Shown: piece after piece, positions 11,628-46,184 of the stretch
How positions within the stretch are numbered: the first letter of the stretch is position 1
How the letters are laid out: each line of letters opens with the position of its first letter
Virus record (IMG/VR): IMGVR_UViG_3300049460_000128
Coordinates: 186,001 to 250,000 of that record
Length of the DNA stretch: 64,000 nt
Direction: 5' to 3' (one strand)
Notes under the pieces: generated by a model
What the model was told of the DNA's origin: nothing
Seen by the model: the letters and a program-made list of their open reading frames with translations, nothing else
Database searches by the model: none
Translations under genes and position numbers: made by a program

Positions 11628-11691
11628 GTTGTATTGCCAGTTGCCAGTATACTGACATTACTCTTTCTTGCAAGTGGCAAGAAATTAACTT

Positions 11692-12096
11692 TTACGGAAT
11701 CACACAGTCAAGCGACTTCAACTGATCCATTAATTGCAGCTTACGAACCGCATAATAGGAGAACCAACGATCACGATTGTCCCATATGAATTCTTCATAC
11801 CGTGCCAACCCATTGCACGGACAGTCATCTGGAAATGCCATCTCATTGATCATCACATAATGGATACAGTCAACATCACGAACGATGATGTAGCTGTCTG
11901 GATCTTCCGCTGCCATCTTCTCCAGATCTGGAACAGTTTCATCCAAGTGACATACATACTCATCATGGATGTTACTGCTATCGATGGCAATATGCTCACG
12001 ATCACAATATGAACAATTGATCGCCGTTGCACCACCACCAGACAAAGAGTTCACAAACGCATCACTGACCTTGGGTCCATCATATTTTCTTTTCAT
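11692..12096 (-). CDS. Hypothetical Cys-containing protein
   Basis: CSYC and CPC motifs; lacks the array motif. Confidence 0.6.
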   Translation of the reverse strand: MKRKYDGPKVSDAFVNSLSGGGATAINCSYCDREHIAIDSSNIHDEYVCHLDETVPDLEKMAAEDPDSYIIVRDVDCIHYVMINEMAFPDDCPCNGLARYEEFIWDNRDRWFSYYAVRKLQLMDQLKSLDCVIP

Positions 12097-12629
12097 ATAC
12101 TCAACTTAAACATTGTCATATCGGATTCAGTCATAGCAACCTTCCACTCAAAATCATGCAGCTCCTCGTCACCCAGGGCGTCATATATGGTTTTATACAA
12201 GTGAACTCTACCATTATGCCGGTTGATCAACTCATTGATTTCCGGCTTTAACATGAGATCAACATGGTGCCGTGGTACAACTATGCTATCCAACTGAGGG
12301 ACTTGTTTGAAATGAATAGTTGAACGAAACGCCTCAAAATGATCAGCAAACCAATCCTGCGAAATACGAAGCTCCGTCATATCTGGAAACTTATAGACGG
12401 ACAAGAACCAATAACCTAACTTCAACTCATAAGTCATATACTTGAGCTTGAACACTACCATATCGCCCAAGGAGTCAAACTCCATATAGGTCAAGAAGCC
12501 ATCGCCATCCGCATAACTCAACTTATGACCATCAGCCAAAATCAAACTCTCAGTGGTAAGAGCCAAGTCCCTAAGACTGGGATCATGCCCACACTGACCC
12601 TCATCATATATGGCAATGAAGTACGTCAT
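12093..12629 (-). CDS. FKLT-family protein, double unit
   Basis: Internal FDSLGDMVVFKLKY and terminal MTESDMTMFKLSI. Confidence 0.75.
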   Translation of the reverse strand: MTYFIAIYDEGQCGHDPSLRDLALTTESLILADGHKLSYADGDGFLTYMEFDSLGDMVVFKLKYMTYELKLGYWFLSVYKFPDMTELRISQDWFADHFEAFRSTIHFKQVPQLDSIVVPRHHVDLMLKPEINELINRHNGRVHLYKTIYDALGDEELHDFEWKVAMTESDMTMFKLSI

Positions 12630-12844
12630 ATCAACACATCACTATACTTGAGTCGAAACATTACCGCCTGCTCATCACTCATAAACTGAATGTGAATGAA
12701 CCCCTGATCTATGAACAAAATCGTTGAGTCATATCCCTCAGATCTCAACTCACTAACAATCTCACCCTTCAACATGGGAAAACCCGTAGGCACACACAAC
12801 GCCTTTACGGCATTAGCAGTCAATCGAATATAACTCATGGACAA
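12626..12844 (-). CDS. FKLT-family small protein
   Basis: FMSDEQAVMFRLKY. Confidence 0.75.
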   Translation of the reverse strand: MSMSYIRLTANAVKALCVPTGFPMLKGEIVSELRSEGYDSTILFIDQGFIHIQFMSDEQAVMFRLKYSDVLI

Positions 12845-13086
12845 CTCAACTTGAATAGCATCAAGTCCTCTTCAGACTCAAAGGTAAGATACGGAGCATC
12901 AGTCTCCAACTCAACCTGACCATATCTGGTGTTTATAACAAACGGCTCCCGCCTACTAGACAATACACCTTTGTACTTGGCAACAACACCAGCATACGGC
13001 TCACGAATCGAAGACGGCGCATAGACAGCATACTGATTCATGGTACACTCACACCAGTCACTCGGTATTTTGATTGATATACTCAT
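12835..13086 (-). CDS. FKLT-family small protein
   Basis: FESEEDLMLFKLSCP. Confidence 0.75.
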   Translation of the reverse strand: MSISIKIPSDWCECTMNQYAVYAPSSIREPYAGVVAKYKGVLSSRREPFVINTRYGQVELETDAPYLTFESEEDLMLFKLSCP

Positions 13087-13292
13087 AGGTGAGTCAACTT
13101 AAACAAGGCAGCCGAGGCTTCATCCGGAAACACAATACTGCAAAAACTCCAACCATGATGATCATCCCACTTAATGTCATACCCCATTCGTCTCGCTATA
13201 TCAATCACCTTATCAATATGACGGATCTGAGCAGTCGTGTAGGTATGCTGGTGATCATCAAAGACTTCAAGTTTAACGATTCCGGTCATCAC
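13083..13292 (-). CDS. FKLT-family small protein
   Basis: FPDEASAALFKLTHL. Confidence 0.8.
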   Translation of the reverse strand: MMTGIVKLEVFDDHQHTYTTAQIRHIDKVIDIARRMGYDIKWDDHHGWSFCSIVFPDEASAALFKLTHL

Positions 13293-13593
13293 TTGGTATC
13301 ACATTAAGCCAATAGTCACTCATACTCAATTTAAACAAAACAGACTGTTCTGATGTCGTAAACTCCAGGTAGGTTTTTGGATTCTCGTCAAGAGTTTCGA
13401 CAGGAATGACCAGATTCAGCGTTCTTAGGTCAAACCCAGCATCCACGATTGCTAGCTGCATTGGGTACTTGAGGCCACCAAAACTCTTGGCCAATTTGCC
13501 ACCCATCATCACACTACGATGGTTCACCCAGTTGACCCAATGATCCGGTATTTCGATACGATCCATATGCTTTATAAAAAACTTTGGTGCCAC
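13273..13593 (-). CDS. FKLT-family small protein (likely start ATG 13566)
   Basis: FTTSEQSVLFKLSM. Confidence 0.7.
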   Translation of the reverse strand: MAPKFFIKHMDRIEIPDHWVNWVNHRSVMMGGKLAKSFGGLKYPMQLAIVDAGFDLRTLNLVIPVETLDENPKTYLEFTTSEQSVLFKLSMSDYWLNVIPSDDRNR

Positions 13594-13689
13594 ATTATGG
13601 CACCATTTGTTGAGTTACTGCTGACCCATATATCATGTTACGGCGTCATGGATCGTCACCAGTCAGTCGTATGACTCTGGGATGACACC

Positions 13690-13965
13690 TTACATGTACG
13701 TGAGCTTAAACAGCGCAGCTTCGTCTTCATGCTCAAAATGCAGATATGGCAAGCTTACTGGAAATTTGAGTTTGATTGACTCGCCAGTATGAAGAGGAAA
13801 ATCGAAGATGACGTCCTCGGATTCCATCACCAGAGTTGCCGCATACTGACTTACGATGTTGATCTTTTCTGGACGTAATCCTGACTTAACTTCACCCAAC
13901 GCTGTAAACTTACGAACGCCGTAGAATATGTCGACCCAATCACTTGGTAGTTTTATTCGTATCAT
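13690..13965 (-). CDS. FKLT-family small protein
   Basis: FEHEDEAALFKLTYM. Confidence 0.8.
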   Translation of the reverse strand: MIRIKLPSDWVDIFYGVRKFTALGEVKSGLRPEKINIVSQYAATLVMESEDVIFDFPLHTGESIKLKFPVSLPYLHFEHEDEAALFKLTYM

Positions 13966-14324
13966 AGGTGGGTGAGCTTGAAAATAGTTGCCGCTGCGTC
14001 ATCATCGAATGCGACGTGTGGCCAATATTGGTCGGTTCTCTGGTAGGTATGGGACACAGTAAGACCATGCTCTGGTCCCAAGTCTGCAATCTTGACTGGG
14101 TGCATGATCATATAACCACCAGCCGCATTGACGATCTCCCAGTATTCATCATCCAAGCCATAATAGCCATGGGTTTGAGCTTTGACTACTCGATTTGACG
14201 GCAAGCCCTTGGCTGCTGAATGCCAGTAATCTCGGGCGTCGTACCACCACCAGAGATTGGGAGGGCGAAAAATTACTGGCATGATAGTTTGAACATCACC
14301 GCATCTTCTTCTGTTTGGAAGCAT
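13962..14324 (-). CDS. FKLT-family small protein (likely start ATG 14282)
   Basis: FDDDAAATIFKLTHL. Confidence 0.75.
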   Translation of the reverse strand: MLPNRRRCGDVQTIMPVIFRPPNLWWWYDARDYWHSAAKGLPSNRVVKAQTHGYYGLDDEYWEIVNAAGGYMIMHPVKIADLGPEHGLTVSHTYQRTDQYWPHVAFDDDAAATIFKLTHL

Positions 14325-14536
14325 GCCATTATTTGATAATAGGGCTTTCGCATGGTTATATACTGGTCCCCATTATGGAACGAGTAATCCATGGATGTCT
14401 TACATCGCACAAGATGGCCATTGTGTTGCTTGACCATTGCCTCATAGGGCGAGTTATCAAGCTTAGCCATGAAAGCTTCCGCGACAAAGCTCCATTCGAT
14501 AGTCACATATTCTTCTGGAGTAGGAATCTGAATCAT
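14273..14536 (-). CDS. FKLT-family small protein
   Basis: FQTEEDAVMFKLSCQ. Confidence 0.78.
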   Translation of the reverse strand: MIQIPTPEEYVTIEWSFVAEAFMAKLDNSPYEAMVKQHNGHLVRCKTSMDYSFHNGDQYITMRKPYYQIMACFQTEEDAVMFKLSCQ

Positions 14537-14787
14537 AGCTCGGTCAACTTGAACAACACTGCATCAGCGTCAGTCTCAAAGGTCAGGCATGGACGCACGG
14601 CCACGTATGGATAGCTTGTACCATCGGGCAGATGCTTGACTAGCTCGTGACGCTCAAATGTGAATTGACAATTGAACTGTTCGAGTACGTGCAGACGCCC
14701 ATCGGTTAACCCTGACAGACGAAACGTTTCTTGCTTTGCATCAAAGCCCCATTTGCACCATTCATACGGTATAATAACTTTAGTCAT
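14533..14787 (-). CDS. FKLT-family small protein
   Basis: FETDADAVLFKLTEL. Confidence 0.8.
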   Translation of the reverse strand: MTKVIIPYEWCKWGFDAKQETFRLSGLTDGRLHVLEQFNCQFTFERHELVKHLPDGTSYPYVAVRPCLTFETDADAVLFKLTEL

Positions 14788-14981
14788 AGGTGTTTGAGTT
14801 TGAAAATTGCAGCGTCACCTTCGTTTTCAAACTCAATAACCCACAGGTAATGACCATCATTATCTGGAGCAGTCGCGAACACCTTGTAGCCATCAGCCCG
14901 ATAGGCGGCTATCTTGTTGTTGAATACCACATTAGGTCTGATCCTAAAGTAATCCTCAGCTAGTATGAAATGAACACTCAT
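14784..14981 (-). CDS. FKLT-family small protein
   Basis: FENEGDAAIFKLKHL. Confidence 0.8.
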   Translation of the reverse strand: MSVHFILAEDYFRIRPNVVFNNKIAAYRADGYKVFATAPDNDGHYLWVIEFENEGDAAIFKLKHL

Positions 14982-15217
14982 AGGTATGTTAGTTTGAACA
15001 TCACGGCATCTTCTTCATTGCGGAAGATCAACTTACAATATCTCCGTACATGCGGTATCATAATACCTTTATATGGCCTTTCTGATCTTTCAGTACAGGT
15101 TTTCCGTATAGCATGAACATCAGTCAAGTATTGTTCTATTTCTTGATTGATGAAGGTTGGCTCACCCCTCCAGGCAATGGCTGCTGGGCTACCGGGAGGT
15201 ATGATAAGCTCGATCAT
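14978..15217 (-). CDS. FKLT-family small protein
   Basis: FRNEEDAVMFKLTYL. Confidence 0.8.
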   Translation of the reverse strand: MIELIIPPGSPAAIAWRGEPTFINQEIEQYLTDVHAIRKTCTERSERPYKGIMIPHVRRYCKLIFRNEEDAVMFKLTYL

Positions 15218-15465
15218 TTGCCCGCGTAGGCCTTGAGTGTCTCCTTTATTGCTTCCTGCTTGGCTTCTTCGGGAGTCAGCACTGGCTTCAAAGTTTCAAC
15301 GAGCAGAACCAGATCATGGGCTGTATTGGAAATCGACAAGCGAGTGTGTTTGCCGTATTGCTTCTTGAATTCCTTCAGGCGGTCAATTGCGTCGGTGATA
15401 TCAGTATTCAGAATTGGCAATTGATTCACTACTGCCCAGGTCATTGGTTGTGTGTTTTTAGTCAT
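15214..15465 (-). CDS. Hypothetical protein embedded in the array (no motif)
   Basis: Overlaps both neighbours; ends YAGK. Confidence 0.65.
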   Translation of the reverse strand: MTKNTQPMTWAVVNQLPILNTDITDAIDRLKEFKKQYGKHTRLSISNTAHDLVLLVETLKPVLTPEEAKQEAIKETLKAYAGK

Positions 15466-15682
15466 TTGGTATACTCAGTTTGAAAATTGCCAGATCACTC
15501 TCGGTCATGAACAGAAGAGTGTTGTTCCTGCCATTGTATATGGCGCCAAGATTATTTGCTAACTCTTGACACCAACTTGTCAACACACAGATGCGATCAC
15601 GATCCTCATTTGCCATAAGGAAAGTGACTCGATAGAAGTCAGTCTCTTTACCTGTTGGGGTTGGCAGTTTGAATGAAATCAT
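15458..15682 (-). CDS. FKLT-family small protein
   Basis: FMTESDLAIFKLSI. Confidence 0.75.
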   Translation of the reverse strand: MISFKLPTPTGKETDFYRVTFLMANEDRDRICVLTSWCQELANNLGAIYNGRNNTLLFMTESDLAIFKLSIPND

Positions 15683-15899
15683 TGTATGTCAATTTGAATA
15701 AAGCTGCGTCCGTGTCAGTCTCGAATTTGATTACGTAGCGACGATGCATCACCCATGTATATTGAGTGTCCCGTTGATATTCATGTTCAATGGCATGTCC
15801 GGCCAGGCGGAACACATTAAGGTATTCATCTTCACCTAACACAATCTCTTGACACAAATTGAAGTGCGGATGCCATCTCGAAATTGGAATTGTGATCAT
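15648..15899 (-). CDS. FKLT-family small protein
   Basis: FETDTDAALFKLTY. Confidence 0.78.
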   Translation of the reverse strand: MITIPISRWHPHFNLCQEIVLGEDEYLNVFRLAGHAIEHEYQRDTQYTWVMHRRYVIKFETDTDAALFKLTYNDFIQTANPNR

Positions 15900-16207
15900 A
15901 AGTGCGTGAGTTTGAACAAGGCAGCTTCATCTTGAGTGGGAAATACCAGCCAATAACGAAGGTCAAGTGTTTGAATGATAGTGTCGCACTTCAGATGCTC
16001 TAAGGCTGGGCGCAGGATGGGATTGAAGCGGATGAAATGTGTGATGCCGGCCGGTGGCCATTTCCATGGAGTCACTTCCAATGCGGTATCAGGCAAGGCC
16101 ACTGGATCACGATAGATCAGCACCTTACCGATAAAGAATTCACATATGAAGCGTTCGAGACGCGGCTCGTTGATGTAGTCCATATTGCCAGTATAACAAA
16201 GCCACAT
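15896..16207 (-). CDS. FKLT-family small protein
   Basis: FPTQDEAALFKLTHL. Confidence 0.78.
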   Translation of the reverse strand: MWLCYTGNMDYINEPRLERFICEFFIGKVLIYRDPVALPDTALEVTPWKWPPAGITHFIRFNPILRPALEHLKCDTIIQTLDLRYWLVFPTQDEAALFKLTHL

Positions 16208-16231
16208 GATGGCAAGTCTGGCAATATTTCA

Positions 16232-16459
16232 CTATTGAGTGAATGGTTCCATGTGGATCTTATCGGCCCACTTGAGACGAAACACGGCCATATCCTCTTC
16301 GTCGTCAAGCCATATCATCTGCTGATTATGGCCAAGTTTTGATGTGATGGATCCCACACGACCATCAAGACGAATCTCCGCAAGATGCGATTGGTATCGA
16401 GTGAAGCAATCGTGATAATTGCGCCATAGTGGCGACAAGATTATGTATGCGTAAGTCAT
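16232..16459 (-). CDS. FKLT-family small protein
   Basis: LDDEEDMAVFRLKW. Confidence 0.72.
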   Translation of the reverse strand: MTYAYIILSPLWRNYHDCFTRYQSHLAEIRLDGRVGSITSKLGHNQQMIWLDDEEDMAVFRLKWADKIHMEPFTQ

Positions 16460-16791
16460 AGGTGAGTCAATTTGAACAAGGCCGCAGCCTCTTCGGAGTC
16501 AAAGAATAAACGGGCATTCTCGATATCAATCTTCACCTGATTATCCTTACAAGTCTTATAGAAGTCTTCTCGTAGGAACCGACGGCGCACAGGCAAACCA
16601 CCGTCGTTCCATCCCGAAAGAACGGTTATGACACCAAGTGGGCAGGCCAATGAAGCCACGCCGGAAGTCGCGGCATCTTCTGGATCAACAATCTCACCGA
16701 ATATGAAACTCATATTGTAGCCTAAAAAGTACCGCGTCTGCTTCAGTCTCGAAGATAAAATACGCTGACGACATACCTTCGCCATATCCAA
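16456..16791 (-). CDS. FKLT-family small protein (start uncertain)
   Basis: FDSEEAAALFKLTHL. Confidence 0.75.
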   Translation of the reverse strand: MDMAKVCRQRILSSRLKQTRYFLGYNMSFIFGEIVDPEDAATSGVASLACPLGVITVLSGWNDGGLPVRRRFLREDFYKTCKDNQVKIDIENARLFFDSEEAAALFKLTHL

Positions 16792-16972
16792 TTTTCACCT
16801 CATCGTTGGTCTGCTTACGGGCCTCAGACATGGATTCAATGAGATCAAACAATGGACTTACCGTTGCGGGGTCGCGAGTGTAGAAGGTCAGGTGATAGCT
16901 AATTTCACCACAGTGATTTGATAGAATTCCAGATCGCTCATGTAGTCGATGAGCATTTGATGACCACGCCAT
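16694..16972 (-). CDS. FKLT-family small protein (start uncertain)
   Basis: FETEADAVLFRLQY. Confidence 0.72.
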   Translation of the reverse strand: MAWSSNAHRLHERSGILSNHCGEISYHLTFYTRDPATVSPLFDLIESMSEARKQTNDEVKIGYGEGMSSAYFIFETEADAVLFRLQYEFHIR

Positions 16973-17166
16973 AACGGGTGATCAGCCGTAGTGCTCAGAT
17001 GTTCAGGTGTCTTGGGCAAAAGCTCGTGCAAGACTATTGTGTGCAAGCCTGGGTTTTCTGGAAGAATCCAGTCGCACCAAGCTTCTGCTTCGTCTTCTTC
17101 TACATCGTATTTCTTTGCCGCGTATTCGATCAGATCGTCGGCTTCAACTCGTACATTATGGTGCAT
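16888..17166 (-). CDS. Hypothetical acidic protein embedded in the array (no motif)
   Basis: Collinear ORF. Confidence 0.6.
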   Translation of the reverse strand: MHHNVRVEADDLIEYAAKKYDVEEDEAEAWCDWILPENPGLHTIVLHELLPKTPEHLSTTADHPLWRGHQMLIDYMSDLEFYQITVVKLAIT

Positions 17167-17168
17167 GA

Positions 17169-17375
17169 TTACAGGTGGGTTAGTTTAAAAAGTGCTGCGG
17201 CATCTTCGGTTCTGAAAAACATCAAACCACGTTTGGTGTCATAGCTGATCTTGTGTTCACGCAGTAAAGCACCGAACTCAGCAGTCACATGTGACTGTTC
17301 TTTCCAGTCACTAGTGTAATAGTAGAAGATACGAAATTTGTGGGGAATTTCAACTTTAATCTTGGAACGTTTCAT
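17169..17375 (-). CDS. FKLT-family small protein
   Basis: FRTEDAAALFKLTHL. Confidence 0.8.
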   Translation of the reverse strand: MKRSKIKVEIPHKFRIFYYYTSDWKEQSHVTAEFGALLREHKISYDTKRGLMFFRTEDAAALFKLTHL

Positions 17376-17584
17376 AGGTATGTGAGTTTGAAAAGTGCTG
17401 CCTCTGCTTCATTCTGGAAGTCTATGTAATAGCATAGCTTGAAGTTGAATTGGCCATATTCTTCGTGTTTGGTTTTCACCTTAAAGCCAGCTGCTTCTAA
17501 TTTATCGAACCACGCATACTCGGCAAGGGCTGTCACACTCGAGACTGAGTATGCCATTCGATCAAGCAAAATTATTCTAACCAT
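17372..17584 (-). CDS. FKLT-family small protein
   Basis: FQNEAEAALFKLTYL. Confidence 0.8.
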   Translation of the reverse strand: MVRIILLDRMAYSVSSVTALAEYAWFDKLEAAGFKVKTKHEEYGQFNFKLCYYIDFQNEAEAALFKLTYL

Positions 17585-17765
17585 AGTGCGTTAACTTCCA
17601 AATGACTGCATCGGCTTCAGTTTCAAACTCCATCCAAATTTGTCGTCGACCATCCACTTCACCCCACCTGGGTTCATGGCCTTTACTTCGCCATTCTATC
17701 AGATCTCGAACGAAGGAATTATTGCGTGGCCTCAGTATAGCATCGTAAAGGATTACTCGTATCAT
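17577..17765 (-). CDS. FKLT-family small protein
   Basis: FETEADAVIWKLTHYG. Confidence 0.78.
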   Translation of the reverse strand: MIRVILYDAILRPRNNSFVRDLIEWRSKGHEPRWGEVDGRRQIWMEFETEADAVIWKLTHYG

Positions 17766-17959
17766 AGGAATTTCAATTTGAATATGGCAGCGTCATCGTC
17801 AGTATCAAAATCCACATAGTATCGATAGATGGCATACCGTGTGTCGTAGTTATATTGCACATCCGATCTAACCTCGAAACCAGCACTCGTTATTTGCGTC
17901 AGCAGTGTGCCCCATTGCTTGAAGTTGTATCGTGTTTGATCGAGTTCGATGTGAATCAT
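17762..17959 (-). CDS. FKLT-family small protein
   Basis: FDTDDDAAIFKLKFL. Confidence 0.8.
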   Translation of the reverse strand: MIHIELDQTRYNFKQWGTLLTQITSAGFEVRSDVQYNYDTRYAIYRYYVDFDTDDDAAIFKLKFL

Positions 17960-18174
17960 TTGACGAAGATTTCCGGATAGGTGAGTTTGAATATCGCAGC
18001 CGCTTCTTCACTACTGAAGACCACCTTGTATTTCTTGTATTTACGGCCGGTCTCATCCAGATACTCATCGAAGTCAAATTTCACTTCTTCTTTGATGAAG
18101 ACTTCTCGGGCAGCAAGCCAACGATCCTTGGTCCACAAATGGTCGATGTTGATGCCTACTGTCAAGATATTCAC
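17956..18174 (-). CDS. FKLT-family small protein
   Basis: FSSEEAAAIFKLTYP. Confidence 0.8.
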   Translation of the reverse strand: MNILTVGINIDHLWTKDRWLAAREVFIKEEVKFDFDEYLDETGRKYKKYKVVFSSEEAAAIFKLTYPEIFVK

Positions 18175-18473
18175 AGTACATTCAGCTTAAACAATGCCGC
18201 AGAAGCTTCGTCTGGGAACACCAGAGTCATACGTCGATTGTCGTTGATTGCTAGATGGGTACGATCAGTTAGATTATGTTTTTCCAAATATGCCTTGATT
18301 TCTGGCATTTTGAATTCCCAATGTGATGGGGTTCCCGGCCACACTTGTTTAGTGATACTTGCCGGATCGTATTCGTCATATACCAGTGCCGCTTTAAACA
18401 GGTGATAGGGGATAATAATAGGTACCATTCTAGCCTCATTAAGTTTGCCACATGATAGTATGGCACCACACAT
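18171..18473 (-). CDS. FKLT-family small protein (likely start ATG 18428)
   Basis: FPDEASAALFKLNVL. Confidence 0.75.
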   Translation of the reverse strand: MCGAILSCGKLNEARMVPIIIPYHLFKAALVYDEYDPASITKQVWPGTPSHWEFKMPEIKAYLEKHNLTDRTHLAINDNRRMTLVFPDEASAALFKLNVL

Positions 18474-18480
18474 AGGTAAA

Positions 18481-18690
18481 TTACATATGCGTCAACTTGA
18501 ACAAGGCAGCTTCAGTTTCATCAACGAACGGTATGTAGAAAAAACGTTTATCGGCCTCATCGTAATAGTTGACCATACATCCAAGTTTCTGATACTTAGA
18601 CGCCTGTGCGCGTAACCGCTCACGATGATCCAGTTCACTTTGTGGTGAATGATAACTGATTTTGGTGCTGCCAATTATGAGTTTGATCAT
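18481..18690 (-). CDS. FKLT-family small protein
   Basis: FVDETEAALFKLTHM. Confidence 0.8.
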   Translation of the reverse strand: MIKLIIGSTKISYHSPQSELDHRERLRAQASKYQKLGCMVNYYDEADKRFFYIPFVDETEAALFKLTHM

Positions 18691-18923
18691 AGATGAGTGA
18701 GCTTAAAGATTGCGGCGGTGGCATCATCCGAAAATCTAATCTTCAGTAAATGTGGTGCGGTCACTTCGCCATCACCAATAACAGTTCCACCCGCAGTCTT
18801 AATCAGTCGTATGGCGTCATTGGTGACGCCCCAGTACATGCAGTCGATGTACCAAGGGCTAACACTGTCTCGGGGTATAACTTCGATTAGCCATTGTTCT
18901 GGTACTGGAAGGTCGATCATCAA
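18687..18923 (-). CDS. FKLT-family small protein
   Basis: FSDDATAAIFKLTHL. Confidence 0.8.
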   Translation of the reverse strand: MMIDLPVPEQWLIEVIPRDSVSPWYIDCMYWGVTNDAIRLIKTAGGTVIGDGEVTAPHLLKIRFSDDATAAIFKLTHL

Positions 18924-19144
18924 TATGTCAATCTAAAAAGTACCGCTTCTTCTTCGGTTTTGAGGTACAGGTATGGTTCGTCAAATGGCTCGTCAACTTC
19001 AAAGTTTTCACCCAACAGTTCTTTGAGAATTGGTTTCGCATACTCAGATGGAAACTTTGCCAAAACACAATCATGGAAACATGGAGCCGATTTGATGTCA
19101 ATATCCCAACACCAAAATTTATCTGGCAACGGTACGCGAATCAT
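18920..19144 (-). CDS. FKLT-family small protein
   Basis: LKTEEEAVLFRLTY. Confidence 0.78.
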   Translation of the reverse strand: MIRVPLPDKFWCWDIDIKSAPCFHDCVLAKFPSEYAKPILKELLGENFEVDEPFDEPYLYLKTEEEAVLFRLTY

Positions 19145-19419
19145 TGGAATCGACCTGCAATAAGTTCTTCAGGGAGTTCGCTCGCATCGACGCCATATTG
19201 TAGCTTGAATACTGCTGCTTCTGCTATCTCATTATCTGGAAAGATGGCATACCAGACTGTTGGATCATCGCCTATGTATTTGGGCGAACAGTCATGTGCT
19301 ATTTTTGCCTCATCCAACTCTGCAATGATGACGTTACAACGGGCCAGACCCGCAGTAGCTTCCTCATATGTGGCACCAGGCTTGAATCTATTTTTGATGT
19401 GGAAGATGATTCGAATCAT
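19141..19419 (-). CDS. FKLT-family small protein
   Basis: FPDNEIAEAAVFKLQY. Confidence 0.72.
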   Translation of the reverse strand: MIRIIFHIKNRFKPGATYEEATAGLARCNVIIAELDEAKIAHDCSPKYIGDDPTVWYAIFPDNEIAEAAVFKLQYGVDASELPEELIAGRFQ

Positions 19420-19655
19420 AGGTGTGTGAGCTTAAAAATGGCTGCTTCGGACTCGGTGGCGAATTCACACCAGAAGATATACGAAATGCTTTTGTCATAT
19501 ATAAACGACGTTGGCAAATCCATCATGCACAGCTTTTTGTTGTCGGTTGGTCTAGCTTCGAGTTTGATGTTGTTATCTGTTAGCATTTGCAGAAATTCAA
19601 CCGTATTTTTGAAGGTGTTCATGAACACCTGGACCTTGATTGTTTGGAGTGCCAT
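19416..19655 (-). CDS. FKLT-family small protein
   Basis: FATESEAAIFKLTHL. Confidence 0.8.
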   Translation of the reverse strand: MALQTIKVQVFMNTFKNTVEFLQMLTDNNIKLEARPTDNKKLCMMDLPTSFIYDKSISYIFWCEFATESEAAIFKLTHL

Positions 19656-19909
19656 TACATGTAGGTGAGTTTGAAGATTGCTGCTTGTGTATCGTCGGCA
19701 AATACCACCACAACTTCAACATCATATTGCTCGTTGAGATACGAAAGCGAATAACCCTCGTCTTTGAGTTGGCGCTCAAGAACTGCACGACGTTCTTCTT
19801 CAATGATCCATTCAGATTTAGACCATATCTTCTCACGCATAAATGCGTACTTCAAATAGGAGTACAGGTAATGGCTTCTCATTGATGATGTCCGTATTTC
19901 AGTTTCCAC
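19655..19909 (-). CDS. FKLT-family small protein
   Basis: FADDTQAAIFKLTYM. Confidence 0.8.
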   Translation of the reverse strand: METEIRTSSMRSHYLYSYLKYAFMREKIWSKSEWIIEEERRAVLERQLKDEGYSLSYLNEQYDVEVVVVFADDTQAAIFKLTYM

Positions 19910-20148
19910 ATGACTGCTTCTTCATCACTGTTAAACACCAGATGGATATCCCAGTTAACTTTTTCTGGTTTCAACGTGTAGGCTTCAGCAGGCAATGGTT
20001 GTCTTGCGATAACCCAACCCGGGAAATCGAAACGTACACCAGTCATGTCGATGCCAATAGGTACCATTACGCGCTTGAACATGGAAGTGTACGTTGAGGG
20101 ATGAGTCACGTACTCTATCCACGAGTTTGGTACTCGTATTCTGGTCAT
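19879..20148 (-). CDS. FKLT-family small protein
   Basis: FNSDEEAVMWKLKY. Confidence 0.76.
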   Translation of the reverse strand: MTRIRVPNSWIEYVTHPSTYTSMFKRVMVPIGIDMTGVRFDFPGWVIARQPLPAEAYTLKPEKVNWDIHLVFNSDEEAVMWKLKYGHHQ

Positions 20149-20351
20149 AGGTGTGTCAACTTAAACATTGCGGCATCTTCTTCTGTATCGAATTCCATCC
20201 ATGCCTTTATCAAAATCGGGCGCATCATGAGTCCATTATATTCGGACTGACGTACGACTGGATGATTTTCGTTCTCCAACTTGTGTACACAGCGTATGGC
20301 CTCAACGGTAGATGGTGTGCCATACATGTCAAATAATAAAATCTTGATCAT
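20145..20351 (-). CDS. FKLT-family small protein
   Basis: FDTEEDAAMFKLTHL. Confidence 0.8.
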   Translation of the reverse strand: MIKILLFDMYGTPSTVEAIRCVHKLENENHPVVRQSEYNGLMMRPILIKAWMEFDTEEDAAMFKLTHL

Positions 20352-20557
20352 AGGTGCGTCAATTTGAACAATGCAGCTTCATCTTCGGTATCAAACCACA
20401 TGTAGATCCACGAGTCATCCATTGCATATTGATAGCCCAGACGAATGATCTTAACACCCATGGCATCTACTTTGGACCAATCACGCCGCATTGCTGGCAC
20501 CGCCGGGTCTTCTGGTAACTTGATGACATTTAGACGGATCATATTCTGAGCTTCCAT
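20348..20557 (-). CDS. FKLT-family small protein
   Basis: FDTEDEAALFKLTHL. Confidence 0.8.
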   Translation of the reverse strand: MEAQNMIRLNVIKLPEDPAVPAMRRDWSKVDAMGVKIIRLGYQYAMDDSWIYMWFDTEDEAALFKLTHL

Positions 20558-20739
20558 ATGGCGTATGCGGCCTCATTGGGGAATTCAATATACCATTTCA
20601 AATGACGTCCCACCTTTTCATACTTGAAAATACTGCCATCAAGCCGTGCTAAGTCGATTTGCTTTGAGACCAATTCATATCGTTCTTTAGTTACATCGTC
20701 TTCTTCTTCCGAATCTAACACCTTGATTGTTATGGTCAT
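20539..20739 (-). CDS. FKLT-family small protein
   Basis: FPNEAAYAIWKLRI. Confidence 0.72.
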   Translation of the reverse strand: MTITIKVLDSEEEDDVTKERYELVSKQIDLARLDGSIFKYEKVGRHLKWYIEFPNEAAYAIWKLRI

Positions 20740-20954
20740 AGGTGCGTGAGTTTAAAAAGCATAGCTTCCTCTTCGGTCTCAAATTCCCAATAAGCCTGAA
20801 CAAGCCCTTCTGTTTCTTCCCGCACGATTGGGCGTGGTAAGTCAGGATGAGCAGACACCCAGGTTGCAGCGGCGCCGCGTAACTTCAAATGGAGCATAAT
20901 AGTGTTTCCTGATACACCAATTGCGCCCAATTCACGAAAGATTACCTTAGCCAT
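20736..20954 (-). CDS. FKLT-family small protein
   Basis: FETEEEAMLFKLTHL. Confidence 0.8.
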   Translation of the reverse strand: MAKVIFRELGAIGVSGNTIMLHLKLRGAAATWVSAHPDLPRPIVREETEGLVQAYWEFETEEEAMLFKLTHL

Positions 20955-21177
20955 GCAATGACTCCCAATTGGTTAATTTGTACAGGGCAGCTTCTTCTTC
21001 AGTCTCAAACTCAACATAAGCTTGCACGAGACCCTGACCTTGGTTACGGGTGACTGGACGTTGCTGTGAAGGATTTTTGACGTGCCAGCGATTGTATTTC
21101 ATCATCAACCACATTTCAGTTGTGAGGGCCGCCGAGTTGGAATTGGTTTGACGTTCGTCAATGATCAATCGAAACAT
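20947..21177 (-). CDS. FKLT-family small protein
   Basis: FETEEEAALYKLTNW. Confidence 0.78.
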   Translation of the reverse strand: MFRLIIDERQTNSNSAALTTEMWLMMKYNRWHVKNPSQQRPVTRNQGQGLVQAYVEFETEEEAALYKLTNWESLHG

Positions 21178-21179
21178 GA

Positions 21180-21398
21180 TTACATGTGAGTGAGTTTGAA
21201 GAGGAGCGCCTCTTCATCGTTGGGAAATTCCCAATAGAGATAAATTTCTTCGTCTGTTTCGTCAATACTGAGTAGTGGCATCCAGTTAAATTGATTGCGC
21301 CAACCATAACTAATAAGCCTCACATCAAAGCGCTGCATGTCTTGCATAAAGTCATCGCCAGTACTGAGAGGCTCGCGGTATACTATTAGTCGATACAT
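21180..21398 (-). CDS. FKLT-family small protein
   Basis: FPNDEEALLFKLTHM. Confidence 0.8.
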   Translation of the reverse strand: MYRLIVYREPLSTGDDFMQDMQRFDVRLISYGWRNQFNWMPLLSIDETDEEIYLYWEFPNDEEALLFKLTHM

Positions 21399-21401
21399 GA
21401 T

Positions 21402-21423
21402 AAAAGGGGATTGCTCCCCTTCC
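21402..21423 (-). terminator. Terminator-like hairpin inside the array
   Basis: GGGGA-GCAA-TCCCC followed by CTTTT. Confidence 0.65.
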
Positions 21424-21453
21424 CTTACTTAATTGCTTCATTGAATAGTTACA

Positions 21454-21678
21454 TCAAGTAGCACCCGGCCACCTGTGACTCAATTTGTACATCATGGCTT
21501 CTTCCTCATCATCGAACAGAAAGTAAACACTGATGCCTTTCTTGCCGCCACGCATTTGAAGAAGTTCCTCGTCGAGCGCCGCACTGTTATTCCAGTTACT
21601 CATAAATTCCCACAAGATATCCCATGACCCAACAGGATACGGGTGAGGAACAAAGCGGACGACGAGTTCGTACATCAT
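21454..21678 (-). CDS. FKLT-family small protein
   Basis: FDDEEEAMMYKLSH. Confidence 0.75.
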   Translation of the reverse strand: MMYELVVRFVPHPYPVGSWDILWEFMSNWNNSAALDEELLQMRGGKKGISVYFLFDDEEEAMMYKLSHRWPGAT

Positions 21679-22052
21679 TGAGCCTTGAAGTCGGCCAGCA
21701 AACGCTCTTCAGCAGCCACACCAGTCAGACCGCGATACCACAAGGTAGCCGAGATAGCCACTGAGTCCCGTTGGATTTCATGCAAGACACGGTTAGCCAT
21801 TTCCAGGTTGTATGTGACCAATACTGGGGTCTGACCCGCGACACTGTCAGCAACCGCAGTAAAGCCATGGCCACTCAAAGCAGCCACGAGAGTGTCGAGG
21901 CTTTTGTGATTGCGTTCATCAACCTCAGGGTAGTGCATGTGGAGGATTGCCATCGGGGTGCCGCCCATCTCGCGAGCAAACGCCTGGAAGACGTCATTGT
22001 GGCTGAGGCCGATCATGTCGTCGGCGATGGTGCTAAAGTCTGGTGTATTCAT
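21675..22052 (-). CDS. Hypothetical protein (no motif)
   Basis: 125 aa ORF with ATGA overlap. Confidence 0.65.
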   Translation of the reverse strand: MNTPDFSTIADDMIGLSHNDVFQAFAREMGGTPMAILHMHYPEVDERNHKSLDTLVAALSGHGFTAVADSVAGQTPVLVTYNLEMANRVLHEIQRDSVAISATLWYRGLTGVAAEERLLADFKAQ

Positions 22053-22085
22053 TTTATTGGTATGCTATGTGTTTAAATTGCGAAT

Positions 22086-22367
22086 TTATTCAACGTTGGT
22101 TTTCATATCGTTAACGAAGCTATAACGCCGCAATGCCGTGATGGTGTCGTCATACGTCAATCGAAATACGACAAGCTCGGATTCGGTATCAAATTCCACA
22201 TGGTAGTGTTCAATCACGTTATAATGACTATAGCCACCTTTGGACGGGTGGATTTCTTCAGACACATGCCCCACCTTATATCCAAGTGACTCCAGCATGG
22301 CAATGAATGCCAACACCTCTTGATTACTACCACGACATGAATAGCTGTGAAACTGATACTGAATCAT
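22086..22367 (-). CDS. FKLT-family small protein
   Basis: FDTESELVVFRLTY. Confidence 0.72.
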   Translation of the reverse strand: MIQYQFHSYSCRGSNQEVLAFIAMLESLGYKVGHVSEEIHPSKGGYSHYNVIEHYHVEFDTESELVVFRLTYDDTITALRRYSFVNDMKTNVE

Positions 22368-22567
22368 TGTTGTGATGTGATGACTATTGGCAACACGACT
22401 TCGCGGAAGTGTTGCGCTGCTTCTTCGGTAGCAAAGTCAATCGCACCCTGATACTTGCCTGCCTCTTGGATTTCGCGATATTGAAATCCAGCAGCTTTCA
22501 TATTTCCTTGCATCAGCATGCGAGGGAATTGGTCTTGCTGGATTTCAAATGTAACAGTGATTGTCAT
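22364..22567 (-). CDS. Small protein with a partial array-like motif
   Basis: IDFATEEAAQHF; lacks KLT. Confidence 0.6.
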   Translation of the reverse strand: MTITVTFEIQQDQFPRMLMQGNMKAAGFQYREIQEAGKYQGAIDFATEEAAQHFREVVLPIVITSQQ

Positions 22568-24413: not shown

Positions 24414-24472
24414 TGTATTTCAATGTAATGTGGTGTTGCCATTCTAGACAGAAGACTTGAGTCAATCAATAG

Positions 24473-30140: not shown

Positions 30141-30613
30141 TATTTGTCTTTGTGTGCGCGGTGAACAAATCTAGGAAAATCCGTTTCACCTAGTGGGTCA
30201 TAGTAGTAGTCATGCAGGTCTTGGTTCAATTGAGCAAACTCATCGGACCATACCTGACAAATGTGCATGGTATGATTTGCCACGCCATTCGTGGGCGCAT
30301 CAACCTGCATGTAGTAGAGGATAGACTGTCCCACTTTACTTTGCAATTTAGACTGCTCCAATTCTGCCAACGCAGGATCCATCTTTGCCCAAGTGGCTGC
30401 ACGCCGATACTCAATCATGCTGTTGATTGCTTCGTGTGTGGCCGGTTTGGTGCGAGCCATCTGTTCGAGGAAGTATTGATTCAAATCGTGATGCATATTA
30501 GCCATTAAAAGGAAGAGGGGAAAGTGAACGCTCAGAACAGAAAGCCAATTTGAATAGAGTAGCATCGTCACTAGTTGTGAACATAAAGTAACTGTTGACA
30601 TTATACCAATCAT
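30140..30613 (-). CDS. Hypothetical protein (start uncertain)
   Basis: ORF overlaps the upstream gene; true start probably downstream. Confidence 0.5.
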   Translation of the reverse strand: MIGIMSTVTLCSQLVTMLLYSNWLSVLSVHFPLFLLMANMHHDLNQYFLEQMARTKPATHEAINSMIEYRRAATWAKMDPALAELEQSKLQSKVGQSILYYMQVDAPTNGVANHTMHICQVWSDEFAQLNQDLHDYYYDPLGETDFPRFVHRAHKDK

Positions 30614-30824
30614 TCACTTCAAAATTGGCAATGCACCATTCCTCTGCTTCGCGGCGCTGTCTGATATCAAGGATTGACATCTCTATAAATCGCCCATAGT
30701 AATGAGTCATCTCATACTTGGATGGAATATGCTGACCTGTTTTGCCATAGTAGCGATCCATGAATTTGCGGACAGGCTCGCCTGCAATCTCACTCAATAC
30801 TTCGTAGTGTTCGTTCAAACTCAT
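30498..30824 (-). CDS. FKLT-family protein (second cluster)
   Basis: FTTSDDATLFKLAF. Confidence 0.7.
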   Translation of the reverse strand: MSLNEHYEVLSEIAGEPVRKFMDRYYGKTGQHIPSKYEMTHYYGRFIEMSILDIRQRREAEEWCIANFEVNDWYNVNSYFMFTTSDDATLFKLAFCSERSLSPLPFNG

Positions 30825-31186
30825 TTGTCAGCCCAGGTTAATTTGTACAAGACAGCATCATCCATATTGACGAACACGTAGCCATACATCGCATTGTTGA
30901 AGTCGTGCTTTTTGTCAAGTAAGGGGATGAACTTGTATGTTTTTACTCCCTTGGATTGTATCCACTCCTTGCACTCTGGTGTCCGCAATTGACGAATAAC
31001 ATCAGCCAACGGCATTAGTACCAGAGTGTGATCTGCATGCCACTTATACGTTTGTGGATCAACGACCACGTAGCCACATTCATCCATTGCCGGATCTGCC
31101 AAGTCATAGTTGTTTCCAAACCAGACATGCGGGTCGCAACCTTGCAGTTTGCATTTTTGATTTATTTCTTGCTGAACTTGTTCCAT
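30821..31186 (-). CDS. FKLT-family protein (second cluster)
   Basis: FVNMDDAVLYKLTW. Confidence 0.72.
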   Translation of the reverse strand: MEQVQQEINQKCKLQGCDPHVWFGNNYDLADPAMDECGYVVVDPQTYKWHADHTLVLMPLADVIRQLRTPECKEWIQSKGVKTYKFIPLLDKKHDFNNAMYGYVFVNMDDAVLYKLTWADK

Positions 31187-31722: not shown

Positions 31723-32147
31723 TAACGACGCCCATTGTCAAATGCACGACGTGTGATGTCGTTCATGGTCTTGAGATCATGGATAGACATATTGACTTCA
31801 CCCAGGTAGCCGATGATTGAGCGAATGAAAACCACAATATGTGGCTCATGATCGGGCATTGTTTCGAGTTCCTTGAAGGCGTCTTGGAACGACGGATAAA
31901 CGATTTTAGAGTCTTCCTGCTCCGCAACCTCACGAGCGATGTCAATAAGCTTTTCCATGACGTCCTCGCCATAATACCAGCGCATTGCACCCAACAGATC
32001 AGACATCTCAATCAAAGCCATGATGACGCAGAACTGTTCAAATGCGTCCATGCACTCAAGGTATTCTTCTCGAATCTTGGAGAATTCCCCCAAGACGCCT
32101 TTTTCGATTACACGAATATGGTAACCAGGATTTTCTTCTTTGCTCAT
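31722..32147 (-). CDS. MazG-like all-alpha nucleotide pyrophosphohydrolase
   Basis: KIREEYLECMDA ... LIEMSDLL matches the EExxE...ExxD metal motif. Confidence 0.6.
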   Translation of the reverse strand: MSKEENPGYHIRVIEKGVLGEFSKIREEYLECMDAFEQFCVIMALIEMSDLLGAMRWYYGEDVMEKLIDIAREVAEQEDSKIVYPSFQDAFKELETMPDHEPHIVVFIRSIIGYLGEVNMSIHDLKTMNDITRRAFDNGRR

Positions 32148-33230: not shown

Positions 33231-33241
33231 TAATACCTGAA

Positions 33242-46160: not shown

Positions 46161-46184
46161 ATCATGTCTACCTACCAGTAAAAA

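What the first reader, a model, noticed from the sequence alone, without database searches (positions are those of the whole stretch)
12093..22367. 10-kb tandem array of 38 small paralogs sharing only a C-terminal FxxExxAxxFKLT(H/Y)L motif
Seen: 38 of the 42 ORFs in this span (62-178 aa as called) end in, or carry near the end, F-x-x-(E/D)-x-(E/D)-A-x-x-(F/W/Y)-(K/R)-L-(T/S/K)-(H/Y). Examples: FPDEASAALFKLTHL, FETDADAVLFKLTEL, FDTEEDAAMFKLTHL. Everything upstream of the motif looks unrelated between members. The motif is conserved as amino acids with synonymous codon variation, so selection acts on the protein. I do not recognise a named family. Inference: a lineage-specific expansion in which a constant terminal element carries a diversified payload. 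The constant element could be a docking, packaging or protease-recognition tag, or a structural core. The payload could be a library of host-takeover or anti-defence effectors, or specificity subunits for one common partner.
Basis: partly seen in the sequence, partly recalled or inferred. Interest (0 to 1): 0.92.

Follow-up and report, generated by a model that had tools for sequence, protein, structure and literature searches.

The report
Giant-phage array of 46 mini-protein paralogs
An uncultured giant phage carries about 46 copies of one unnamed, fast-evolving 65-residue protein domain, which probably acts as a set of small binders against host or rival targets, though no function has been shown.

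Summary
On the minus strand, 38 ORFs in 12093-22367 carry the C-terminal F-x-[TDN]-E-[EA]-[ED]-A-A-L-F-K-L-T-[HY]-L block. A 39th member lies at 22364-22567 and seven more at 30498-33906. Synonymous codons in the block are scrambled, so selection acts on the protein.

The "constant tag plus unrelated payload" reading is not supported. Compact members align end to end. AlphaFold2 gives one confident small domain (strand-helix-strand-strand-helix, pLDDT 90.6) whose last helix is the motif. This domain is a ferredoxin-like fold lacking its fourth strand.

No Pfam, PHROG or NCBIfam family matches, and no solved or viral structure is significantly similar. The family occurs only in giant-phage contigs. 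The cultured Sinorhizobium phage Phosso has at least six dispersed, unannotated copies.

Two syntenic relatives carry 26-33 copies at the same position. Most window copies have their best match in another genome, so the expansion is old. Array members diverge about five times faster than flanking genes.

Best guess: these are cytoplasmic, co-translated small binders used for host takeover or counter-defence. Links to a protease or to RNA binding remain possible but are weaker.

The parts
12093..12629 (-). Two-domain family member, 178 aa. Domain 1 ends in an internal VFKLKYM and domain 2 ends in MFKLSI. It is the last array gene before the 134-aa ORF and the AAA-M41 protease gene.
   Evidence: Two motif hits. 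Only five homologs exist among 5.8 billion proteins, all 176-181 aa. The AF2 model has pLDDT 74, and residues 1-65 repeat the strand-helix-strand-strand-helix order. Orthologs occupy the same position in L003 and L011.
12626..15217 (-). Ten back-to-back single-domain members: 12626-12844, 12835-13086, 13083-13292, 13273-13593 (true start probably the ATG at 13566), 13690-13965, 13962-14324 (a 106-aa form starts at the in-frame ATG 14 codons downstream), 14273-14536, 14533-14787, 14784-14981, 14978-15217.
   Evidence: Motif in each. HMM E-values range from 7.7e-4 to 1.5e-16. Several begin M-I-x-I-x-[LI]-P-x-x-W, a subfamily of about 12 members.
15458..16972 (-). Six members: 15458-15682, 15648-15899, 15896-16207, 16232-16459, 16456-16791, 16694-16972.
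   Evidence: Motif in each. HMM E-values range from 5.1e-3 to 9.1e-11, except 15458-15682, which is found by regex only. Clear orthologs in L003 for 15458, 15648, 15896 and 16456.
17169..21678 (-). Twenty members, mostly compact (62-100 aa): 17169-17375, 17372-17584 (the one modelled), 17577-17765, 17762-17959, 17956-18174, 18171-18473, 18481-18690, 18687-18923, 18920-19144, 19141-19419, 19416-19655, 19655-19909, 19879-20148, 20145-20351, 20348-20557, 20539-20739, 20736-20954, 20947-21177, 21180-21398, 21454-21678.
   Evidence: Motif in each. HMM E-values range from 2.1e-3 to 5.2e-19. AF2 of 17372-17584 gives pLDDT 90.6 and pTM 0.74. 20736-20954 and 20947-21177 are the only recent in-genome pair, at 57.5% identity.
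22086..22567 (-). The two promoter-proximal members. 22086-22367 (93 aa) has a 22-residue tail after the motif.
   Evidence: HMM E 1.2e-7 and 1e-9. Both align colinearly with the family.
30498..31186 (-). Second cluster, part a. Two longer members: 30498-30824 (108 aa, FKLAF plus tail) and 30821-31186 (121 aa, YKLTWADK).
   Evidence: HMM E 3.7e-4 and 2.2e-4.
32144..33906 (-). Second cluster, part b. Five longer members directly downstream of the clamp-like gene and DNA polymerase: 32144-32530, 32521-32856, 32847-33230, 33242-33583, 33580-33906 (108-128 aa, ending FRLTYSDI, FKLTWQ, FKLRWS, FKLTWL, FKLTYP).
   Evidence: HMM E-values range from 1.8e-4 to 5.2e-3, except 32521-32856, which is found by regex only. 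The W-type ending is the one seen in distant phages L001, L013 and Phosso.
15214..15465 (-). 83-aa ORF embedded in the array, not a family member. The other embedded non-members are 16888-17166 (92 aa) and 21675-22052 (125 aa).
   Evidence: No motif. No Pfam or PHROG hit. 15214-15465 and 16888-17166 have orthologs inside the L003 array at 41-44% identity.
13585..13605 (-). GC-rich hairpin followed by a T run, in the only sizeable gap of the array. It may be an internal terminator or an RNA processing site.
   Evidence: Nine-pair stem with T-rich tail. Overall, promoter-like and terminator-like counts in the array are at chance level.
9660..12096 (-). Context genes immediately downstream on the same strand. 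11692-12096 is a Cys-rich 134-aa ORF. 9660-11627 is a soluble FtsH-like AAA+/M41 protease with Walker A and HExxH motifs and no membrane segment evident.
   Evidence: Pfam Peptidase_M41 6.3e-28 plus AAA. The same order (array, two-domain member, roughly 135-aa ORF, AAA-M41) occurs in L003 and L011/L012. It does not occur in more distant carriers of the protease.

Best explanation
Shown:
- Each ORF encodes one copy of a previously unnamed, phage-only mini-domain of about 65 residues, with order strand1-helix1-strand2-strand3-helix2. This is a ferredoxin-like or RRM-like half-sandwich that lacks the fourth strand.
- The flagged motif is the end of strand 3 (aromatic-hydrophobic-E-F), a helix N-cap (T/D/N-E-E-[ED]) and the whole of helix 2 (A-A-L-F-K-L-T-[HY]-L). 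It is therefore the fold core, not a detachable tag.
- Other conserved positions are strand 1 (M-[IV]-[RK]-[VIL]-x-[LVI]-[FY]-[DN]) and the helix1/strand2 junction (G-[YF]-x-[VI]).
- Helix 1, the strand1-helix1 loop and the strand2-strand3 hairpin vary freely in sequence and length.
- The window holds 46 copies, about 19% of its DNA, in two same-strand clusters inside the replication and nucleotide-modification gene block.
- 22 of 41 gene junctions are ATGA stop/start overlaps and few genes have their own Shine-Dalgarno-like sequence.
- The duplications are old, the paralogs persist as separate lineages, and they diverge about five times faster than flanking genes.

Inferred:
- The products are soluble, mostly acidic cytoplasmic proteins made together from long, translationally coupled transcripts, early or in the middle of infection.
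- Each uses its variable surface to bind a different host or competitor target, as a germline-encoded repertoire for host takeover or counter-defence.
- The missing fourth strand leaves strand 1 as an open edge. The helix-free face of the sheet carries conserved residues ([RK]3, [FY]7, [YW]53, E55). These features suggest dimerisation or strand-addition binding as the common docking mode.
For: - Whole-length colinear alignment of 63 compact members, from the window and from databases.
- AF2 model with pLDDT 90.6 and pTM 0.74: E2-11, H18-31, E37-43, E47-56, H59-69.
- Column statistics show that both faces of strands 1 and 3 are conserved, as is all of helix 2.
- An N-terminal-only profile built from external sequences recovers window members well above shuffled controls.
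- No Pfam, PHROG or NCBIfam family matches. No significant PDB or BFVD fold match; the best hits are generic ferredoxin-like, ACT, PII or NusE folds at E>=0.18, and uncharacterised phage proteins at E 0.019.
- The family is restricted to phages. There are 117 representatives at E<=1e-3 among 1.84 billion proteins, all short and none named in the clusters looked up. None was confirmed in 185,579 cellular genomes.
- Tandem arrays recur elsewhere: L003 has 32-33 members, L011 has 26, L010 has 11 of 12 ORFs, and L001 about 15.
- Fast evolution between window and L003: median dN is 0.52 for array pairs against 0.10 for flanks. Amino-acid identity is 35-69% against 65-97%. Gene order is partly scrambled.
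- The expansion is old: 38 of 45 members are closer to a member in another genome than to any paralog of their own, and there are no long DNA repeats.
- Median pI is 5.5, and no member has a clear membrane segment or signal peptide; one of 46 is borderline for hydrophobicity.
- ATGA overlaps occur at 22 of 41 junctions. Shine-Dalgarno-like sequences precede 5 of 42 array genes against 10 of 18 large genes.
- In the distant phage contig L013, members sit among SIR2, ART-PolyVal ADP-ribosyltransferase and methyltransferase genes, which is a conflict-type neighbourhood.
Against: - There is no direct evidence of expression, timing, binding partners or phenotype.
- dS between window and L003 is saturated, so positive selection cannot be separated from relaxed constraint. 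Where dS could be computed, dN/dS is about 0.3-0.5 against 0.03-0.16 for flanks.
- Conserved residues on the open sheet face and all around helix 2 could mean one shared partner rather than many different targets.
- I had no model coordinates. Which residues are buried or exposed is deduced from strand alternation and helix periodicity only.
- The longer members (P-x-x-W subfamily and second cluster) were not modelled. Their N-terminal parts are not recovered by the profile.
Confidence: 0.5

Rival explanations
1. Protease-linked set. The proteins are substrates, adaptors or inhibitors of the phage's own AAA+ proteases (the adjacent soluble FtsH-like AAA-M41, or the ClpA-like gene at 57510-59816). 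The non-polar C-terminal end (THL, TYL or TW followed by the carboxylate) would act as the recognition element.
For: - The array, the two-domain member, a roughly 135-aa ORF and AAA-M41 lie in the same order on one strand in three related phages.
- 25 of 45 members end exactly two residues after the conserved T.
- The array in L001 lies about 4 kb from a ClpX-like gene.
- One member sits directly after the protease gene in L018.
Against: - The C-terminal block is a well-packed helix in the model (pLDDT 96-97), not a free tail.
- About 40% of members carry extra tails of 1-22 residues after the motif, so the terminus is not fixed.
- A carrier of the protease at 57% identity has no member within 10 kb. 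One at 61% has only three scattered members.
- Phosso has at least six members, but no AAA-M41 was found in the syntenic 43-kb region L014, and a tblastn of the window protease listed no Phosso hit among its 12 best of 20 phage records.
Confidence: 0.12
2. RRM-like nucleic-acid binders. The domain is a truncated RNA-recognition-motif relative. The open sheet face would bind RNA or single-stranded DNA, using the basic residue on strand 1 and aromatics on strands 1 and 3. The paralogs would give sequence-specific control of phage or host transcripts.
For: - The topology equals an RRM without its fourth strand.
- The strand3-helix2 junction resembles RNP1 plus the helix start. The profile's best named natural PDB hits are nucleolin RRMs (E 0.089-0.9), aligned at exactly that place in several RRMs of the protein.
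- Single weak Pfam hits to RRM_NFXL1 (0.017) and RRM_Nup35 (0.042).
- Conserved [RK]3, [FY]7 and [YW]53 fall on alternate strand positions.
Against: - None of these matches is significant and none recurs across members.
- Foldseek gives no RRM among its top PDB hits.
- The proteins are mostly acidic: median pI 5.5, net charge -3, and only 3 of 46 have pI above 8.
- The fourth strand is absent.
Confidence: 0.12
3. Self-assembling building blocks. The open strand-1 edge lets the paralogs form homo- or hetero-oligomers, which would make a structural or scaffold assembly (virion decoration, intracellular compartment or chaperone-like cage) rather than act on host targets.
For: - The fold is incomplete, with an exposed edge strand, and both sheet faces are conserved and hydrophobic.
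- Translational coupling suggests near-equimolar synthesis.
- A natural two-domain fusion exists.
Against: - Structural components usually evolve slowly and keep their copy number. Here divergence is five times faster than in the flanks, and copy number differs between relatives: 45 in the window, and 33 and 26 in the sequenced parts of L003 and L011, which may not cover their whole arrays.
- The genes lie in the replication block, not the virion block.
- The interdomain geometry of the two-domain model is of low confidence.
Confidence: 0.08
4. One reading: a constant C-terminal docking or packaging tag fused to unrelated effector payloads.
For: Pairwise similarity upstream of the motif is close to background. 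The longer members (100-128 aa) have N-terminal parts that the family profile does not recover.
Against: - Compact members leave no room for a separate payload. They align end to end and fold as one domain that includes the motif.
- The N-terminal-only profile detects many members.
Confidence: 0.05

Closest known systems
RRM / ferredoxin-like beta-alpha-beta-beta-alpha-beta domains (RRM_1, ACT, PII, ribosomal S10/NusE)
   Same: The order of the first five secondary-structure elements is the same. An aromatic-rich central strand 3 is followed by an acidic-capped helix with a small Ala. Weak profile hits fall on nucleolin RRMs at that junction. The weak Foldseek neighbours are ferredoxin-like proteins.
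   Different: The fourth strand is missing. No sequence or structure match is significant: best PDB Foldseek E 0.18 with TM 0.33-0.44, best natural-protein HMM E 0.089 (nucleolin; a de novo designed protein scored 0.039). The members are acidic, 62-80 aa and stand alone.
Zn-ribbon expansion of about 35 copies in Bacillus phage G (Iyer et al. 2021, PMC7824862)
   Same: It is a very large within-genome expansion of one small domain in a jumbo phage, with function only guessed.
   Different: The fold is unrelated (a metal-binding ribbon against an alpha/beta half-sandwich) and so is the phage group. The present family is shared by many uncultured giant phages and forms translationally coupled tandem arrays.
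Clusters of small early genes in large lytic phages, such as the T4 early 'monkey-wrench' ORFs and the SPO1 host-takeover module (my own knowledge, not tested here)
   Same: The genes are small, tightly packed, on one strand, poorly conserved between relatives, lie next to replication genes, and encode cytoplasmic products.
   Different: Those clusters consist mostly of mutually unrelated proteins. Here about 46 genes are one family built on one scaffold.
C-terminal degradation tags recognised by AAA+ proteases, ssrA-type (my own knowledge)
   Same: There is a short non-polar C-terminal end, and a neighbouring FtsH-like protease gene and a ClpA-like gene.
   Different: The block is an integral helix of the fold. 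The terminus is often extended. The gene adjacency is not kept outside close relatives.

Membership tests
RRM (RNA recognition motif, Pfam RRM_1 clan) | Significant profile match to an RRM family model or to solved RRMs | tested here: not met
   Across 46 and 63 members, Pfam gave only single hits: RRM_NFXL1 at 0.017 and RRM_Nup35 at 0.042. The best natural-protein hit of the profile against PDB sequences was nucleolin at E 0.089.
RRM (RNA recognition motif, Pfam RRM_1 clan) | Four-stranded sheet (beta1-alpha1-beta2-beta3-alpha2-beta4) with RNP2 on strand 1 and RNP1 on strand 3 | tested here: not met
   The model ends with helix 2 and most members stop 2 residues after it, so there is no fourth strand. 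Strand 3 keeps an RNP1-like aromatic-hydrophobic-x-F pattern, and strand 1 has [RK]3 and [FY]7.
RRM (RNA recognition motif, Pfam RRM_1 clan) | Binds RNA or single-stranded DNA | not testable with these tools
   The only indirect evidence is that 32 of 46 members have pI below 6.
Ferredoxin-like fold, structural class only | Beta-alpha-beta-beta-alpha(-beta) order with helices on one face of an antiparallel sheet | tested here: inconclusive
   The element order fits. The Foldseek neighbours are ACT, PII, NusE and a designed ferredoxin, but with TM 0.33-0.44 and E>=0.18. I could not inspect the coordinates.
Any curated protein family (Pfam-A, PHROGs v4, NCBIfam 20) | A recurrent match across members at or near the curated threshold | tested here: not met
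   No family was matched by more than 2 members, and none came near its cut-off.
C-terminal protease-recognition or docking tag | The tag is an unstructured, transferable terminal peptide at a fixed distance from the C-terminus | tested here: not met
   The block is predicted as a packed helix at pLDDT 96-97. Tails after the motif vary from 1 to 22 residues.
C-terminal protease-recognition or docking tag | Conserved association with the cognate protease gene | tested here: inconclusive
   The adjacency holds in three close relatives. It is absent or weak at 57-61% protease identity. Phosso has members but no AAA-M41 in the syntenic 43-kb region examined, L014.
Recent, DNA-level tandem duplication or gene-conversion array | Long near-identical DNA repeats between copies | tested here: not met
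   The only repeats are the 27-61-nt motif block at 60-82% identity. Codons are randomised. Most members have closer relatives in other genomes.

The most novel reading that the evidence does not exclude
The array is a germline-encoded repertoire of about 46 mini-binders on one truncated ferredoxin-like scaffold. Each paralog would neutralise a different host defence or host factor by strand addition at its open edge. That would make it the largest single-family counter-defence or host-takeover arsenal known in a phage, and a natural binder scaffold.
Probability: 0.2. Interest if true: 0.85.

Novelty: new variant of a known kind. Interest (0 to 1): 0.6.

Why it matters
Giant phages carry hundreds of unexplained small genes. 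This one unnamed domain accounts for about a fifth of a 64-kb stretch of such a phage, and it recurs in many uncultured giant phages and in one cultured phage.

Its old but rapidly diverging paralogs, packed into coupled arrays, look like an arms-race locus. If the copies prove to be target-specific binders, they would open a large, structured set of phage-host interaction probes and offer a compact natural binding scaffold.

If they instead share one partner, the family would point to an unknown core process of this phage group. Either way, the family deserves a name and a profile so that these ORFs stop being annotated one by one as 'hypothetical'.

Tried and rejected
- Megablast of the array against GenBank phages found no match. 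tblastn of single members, including a consensus-like one, found nothing. Cultured relatives can be reached only with a profile.
- The Pfam hit to DUF2786 (two members, E 0.06) covers only the Ala/Glu-rich helix and was dismissed as compositional.
- KH-domain hits for the two-domain model (E 0.028, TM 0.21) were dismissed because the model is of low confidence and the topology differs.
- I looked for population-level variation among L003-L006, but those contigs are identical in sequence.
- dN/dS was attempted, but dS is saturated or not computable for most array pairs.
- Sigma-70-type promoter and terminator scans are at chance level in the array.
- The search for related loci could not confirm divergent relatives, because confirmation uses only the first sequence. 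It confirmed 1 of 74 viral stretches, 0 of 21 genome stretches and 0 of 324 metagenome stretches.
- In the 43-kb Atu_ph07 region around the polymerase there are only look-alikes without FKL, at E>0.5. I do not count them as members.
- A diversity-generating or recent-duplication mechanism was rejected, because there are no long repeats.
- A T4-style prohead-protease or capsid-targeting signal was considered and dropped. The motif is C-terminal and helical and does not fit the L/I-x-E cleavage pattern (that pattern is my own knowledge).

Full report
**Origin of the window.** The window belongs to the 296,594-bp contig IMGVR_UViG_3300049460_000128. It is from a giant tailed phage. Identified genes:
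- family-B DNA polymerase at 34826-37804;
- 5'-3' exonuclease;
- a weak ATP-dependent DNA ligase match (41850-42860, PHROG E 3.7e-6);
- ClpA-like ATPase;
- MoxR-like AAA plus a DUF2201 metallopeptidase/VWA pair;
- QueE-like radical-SAM enzyme and GTP cyclohydrolase I;
- several tail-fibre genes.

The polymerase is 51.6% identical to that of Sinorhizobium phage Phosso, 49% to Agrobacterium phage Atu_ph07 and 42% to RaK2-type phages. At DNA level nothing in GenBank phages resembles the array.

- A six-frame regex scan finds the C-terminal block only in the three minus-strand frames.
- Thirty-eight ORFs of 62-178 aa in 12093-22367 carry it.
- A profile HMM hits 44 six-frame ORFs in the window, all on the minus strand.
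- Codons at conserved residues are randomised, and the block is only 53% identical at DNA level.
- No longer DNA repeat exists, so conservation is at protein level.
- The family is larger than reported. There is a divergent copy at 22364-22567 and seven longer copies at 30498-31186 and 32144-33906.
- The 178-aa ORF is a two-domain fusion.
- In total there are 46 members, 12.1 kb, or 19% of the window.

**The family is one small domain, not a tag with payloads.**
- Pairwise, the parts upstream of the motif are barely similar.
- Even so, 63 compact members from the window and from databases align colinearly over their full length.
- Conserved positions, numbered on 17372-17584, are M1, [IV]2, [RK]3, [VIL]4, [LVI]6, [FY]7, [DN]8; G33, [YF]34, [VI]36; Y52, [YW]53, [IVL]54, E55, F56; then [ED]57, T58, E59, E60, [ED]61, A62, A63, L64, F65, K66, L67, T68, [HY]69, L70.
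- AlphaFold2 with this alignment gives pLDDT 90.6 and pTM 0.74. The elements are strand 2-11, helix 18-31, strand 37-43, strand 47-56 and helix 59-69.
- The motif is therefore the end of strand 3, a helix cap and the last helix.
- A profile of the N-terminal 50 positions, built only from non-window sequences, finds 13 of 46 window N-terminal parts at E<=0.1 against 0.45 in shuffles. It finds 24 at E<=1 against 4.2.
- The first domain of the two-domain protein repeats the same element order, though that model is only moderately confident at pLDDT 74.

**Comparison with known families.**
- Pfam, PHROGs and NCBIfam give no recurrent hit.
- Foldseek finds nothing significant in the PDB. The best hits are generic ferredoxin-like proteins at E>=0.18.
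- In BFVD the best hits are uncharacterised phage proteins at E 0.019.
- The profile's best named natural PDB sequence hits are nucleolin RRMs, aligned at the strand3-helix2 junction, at E 0.089-0.9. This is a resemblance, not membership.
- No paper in the library contains the motif in a protein context; the single text match is unrelated.
- The jumbo-phage survey PMC7824862 describes other expansions, such as about 35 Zn-ribbons in phage G. This family did not come up in a term search of that paper for 'paralog' and 'expansion'; I did not read it in full.

**Distribution.**
- A profile search of 1.84 billion representative proteins gives 117 hits at E<=1e-3. Twenty-seven are the window's own. 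One, a 1037-aa protein with no matched stretch, is probably spurious. All the others are 55-181 aa, and most match end to end; none of the clusters looked up carries a functional name.
- Every context examined is a phage-like contig, often very large (211-438 kb), and usually shows tandem runs. L003 has 32-33 members, L011 has 26, L010 has 11 of 12 ORFs, L001 has about 15, L013 has about 7, and L008/L009 are short arrays.
- No copy was confirmed in 185,579 bacterial and archaeal genomes.
- The cultured phage Phosso has at least six dispersed members of 100-140 aa, all annotated hypothetical.
- In the 43 kb of Atu_ph07 examined there is no clear member.

**Evolution.**
- L003 and L011/L012 are syntenic relatives. 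The QueE-like gene precedes the array in the window and L003. In all three the order is array, two-domain member, a roughly 135-aa Cys-rich ORF (in L003 and L011/L012 with a 62-66-aa ORF before it), AAA-M41 protease, a 304-aa gene, then the exonuclease.
- Between window and L003, flanking proteins are 65-97% identical with median dN 0.10. Reciprocal-best array pairs are 35-69% identical with median dN 0.52, and their order is partly scrambled. dS is saturated.
- Thirty-eight of 45 window members score higher to a member in another genome than to any paralog of their own. About 20 have clear orthologs. Only one recent in-genome pair exists.
- The expansion is therefore old. Paralogs are retained as separate lineages, they diverge quickly, and some are gained or lost.
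- Phosso shares the surrounding synteny but has neither the array nor the protease at that place.

**Expression signals.**
- All members share the strand of the replication genes.
- 22 of 41 junctions are ATGA overlaps, and only 5 of 42 genes have a Shine-Dalgarno-like core, against 10 of 18 large genes. This points to translational coupling.
- Promoter-like and terminator-like sites are at chance level, apart from one strong hairpin at 13585-13605.
- The products are mostly acidic and lack membrane or signal segments.

**Mechanism.**
- Shown: one fold, a core motif, old tandem paralogy, fast divergence, restriction to phages, and coupled gene organisation.
- Inferred: these are soluble intracellular proteins made together. 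Their variable helix 1 and loops would give each paralog its own binding specificity for host or rival targets.
- Also inferred: the missing fourth strand and the conserved residues on the helix-free sheet face suggest dimerisation or strand-addition docking.
- The protease-linked rival is weakened. The motif is folded, the tails vary, and adjacency to AAA-M41 disappears in carriers of the protease at 57-61% identity.
- The RRM-like rival rests on non-significant similarity and is at odds with the acidic charge.
- I rate the main model at about 0.5 and no rival above 0.12.

Noticed in passing
window 9660-11627 (-): A soluble FtsH-like protease (AAA+ plus Peptidase_M41, with no evident membrane segment). 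It has 1848 homologs at E<1e-10 in metagenomes, on contigs up to 523 kb. Its only matches in GenBank phage records are partial and distant (24-36% of the query, 27-35% identity; 12 best of 20 records seen). It looks like a hallmark gene of a large uncultured giant-phage group.
   Followed up: partly
window 11692-12096 (-): A Cys-rich 134-aa ORF that always sits between the array and the AAA-M41 gene in the window, L003 and L011/L012. It is 64% identical to its L003 ortholog and has no Pfam or PHROG match. It may be a zinc-binding partner of the protease.
   Followed up: partly
window 22650-23393 (+): The only plus-strand gene near the array: a 247-aa protein with a C2H2 zinc finger and DUF723. 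It lies between the array and the QueE-like gene. L003 has no counterpart there, and DUF723 genes also flank the protease in L018. It is probably a mobile homing-endonuclease-type insertion.
   Followed up: partly
window 23394-26213 (-): A QueE-like radical-SAM gene (23394-24413) and GTP cyclohydrolase I (25536-26213), with the same genes in Phosso (annotated preQ0 pathway). This suggests 7-deazaguanine modification of the phage DNA.
   Followed up: no
window 1823-4534 (-): A MoxR-like AAA ATPase (3173-4534) next to a DUF2201 metallopeptidase/VWA protein (1823-3061). PMC7824862 describes a MoxR-vWA chaperone pair as typical of group 2.2 jumbo phages, and this may be that pair.
   Followed up: no
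window 13585-13605: A perfect 8-9-bp GC-rich hairpin with a T run in the only roughly 100-nt gap of the array. It overlaps the GTG start called for 13273-13593, so that gene more likely starts at the ATG at 13566.
   Followed up: partly
window 15214-15465, 16888-17166, 21675-22052 (-): Three ORFs inside the array lack the motif and match no family. Two have orthologs inside the L003 array, so they are stable passengers rather than decayed copies.
   Followed up: partly
L013 (ENA ERZ23498405, 211-kb contig) 1-20420: In a distant giant-phage contig, about seven family members are interspersed with SIR2, an ART-PolyVal ADP-ribosyltransferase and several methyltransferases. This is a neighbourhood typical of conflict systems.
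   Followed up: partly
L016 (Atu_ph07) 35017-35325, 32650-32934, 18818-19222: Small Atu_ph07 ORFs end in look-alike blocks such as ...AFEDSDDALQFVLRY and ...VFENEEDMLTAALVL, but without F-K-L. They may be very distant relatives of the same fold. HMM E-values are above 0.5, so this is unproven.
   Followed up: no
window 44045-54533 and 62085-63914 (-): A run of large tail-fibre-like genes with collagen-like and fibre PHROG matches. This fits the 'hairy' virions described for Atu_ph07-type phages in PMC7824862.
   Followed up: no
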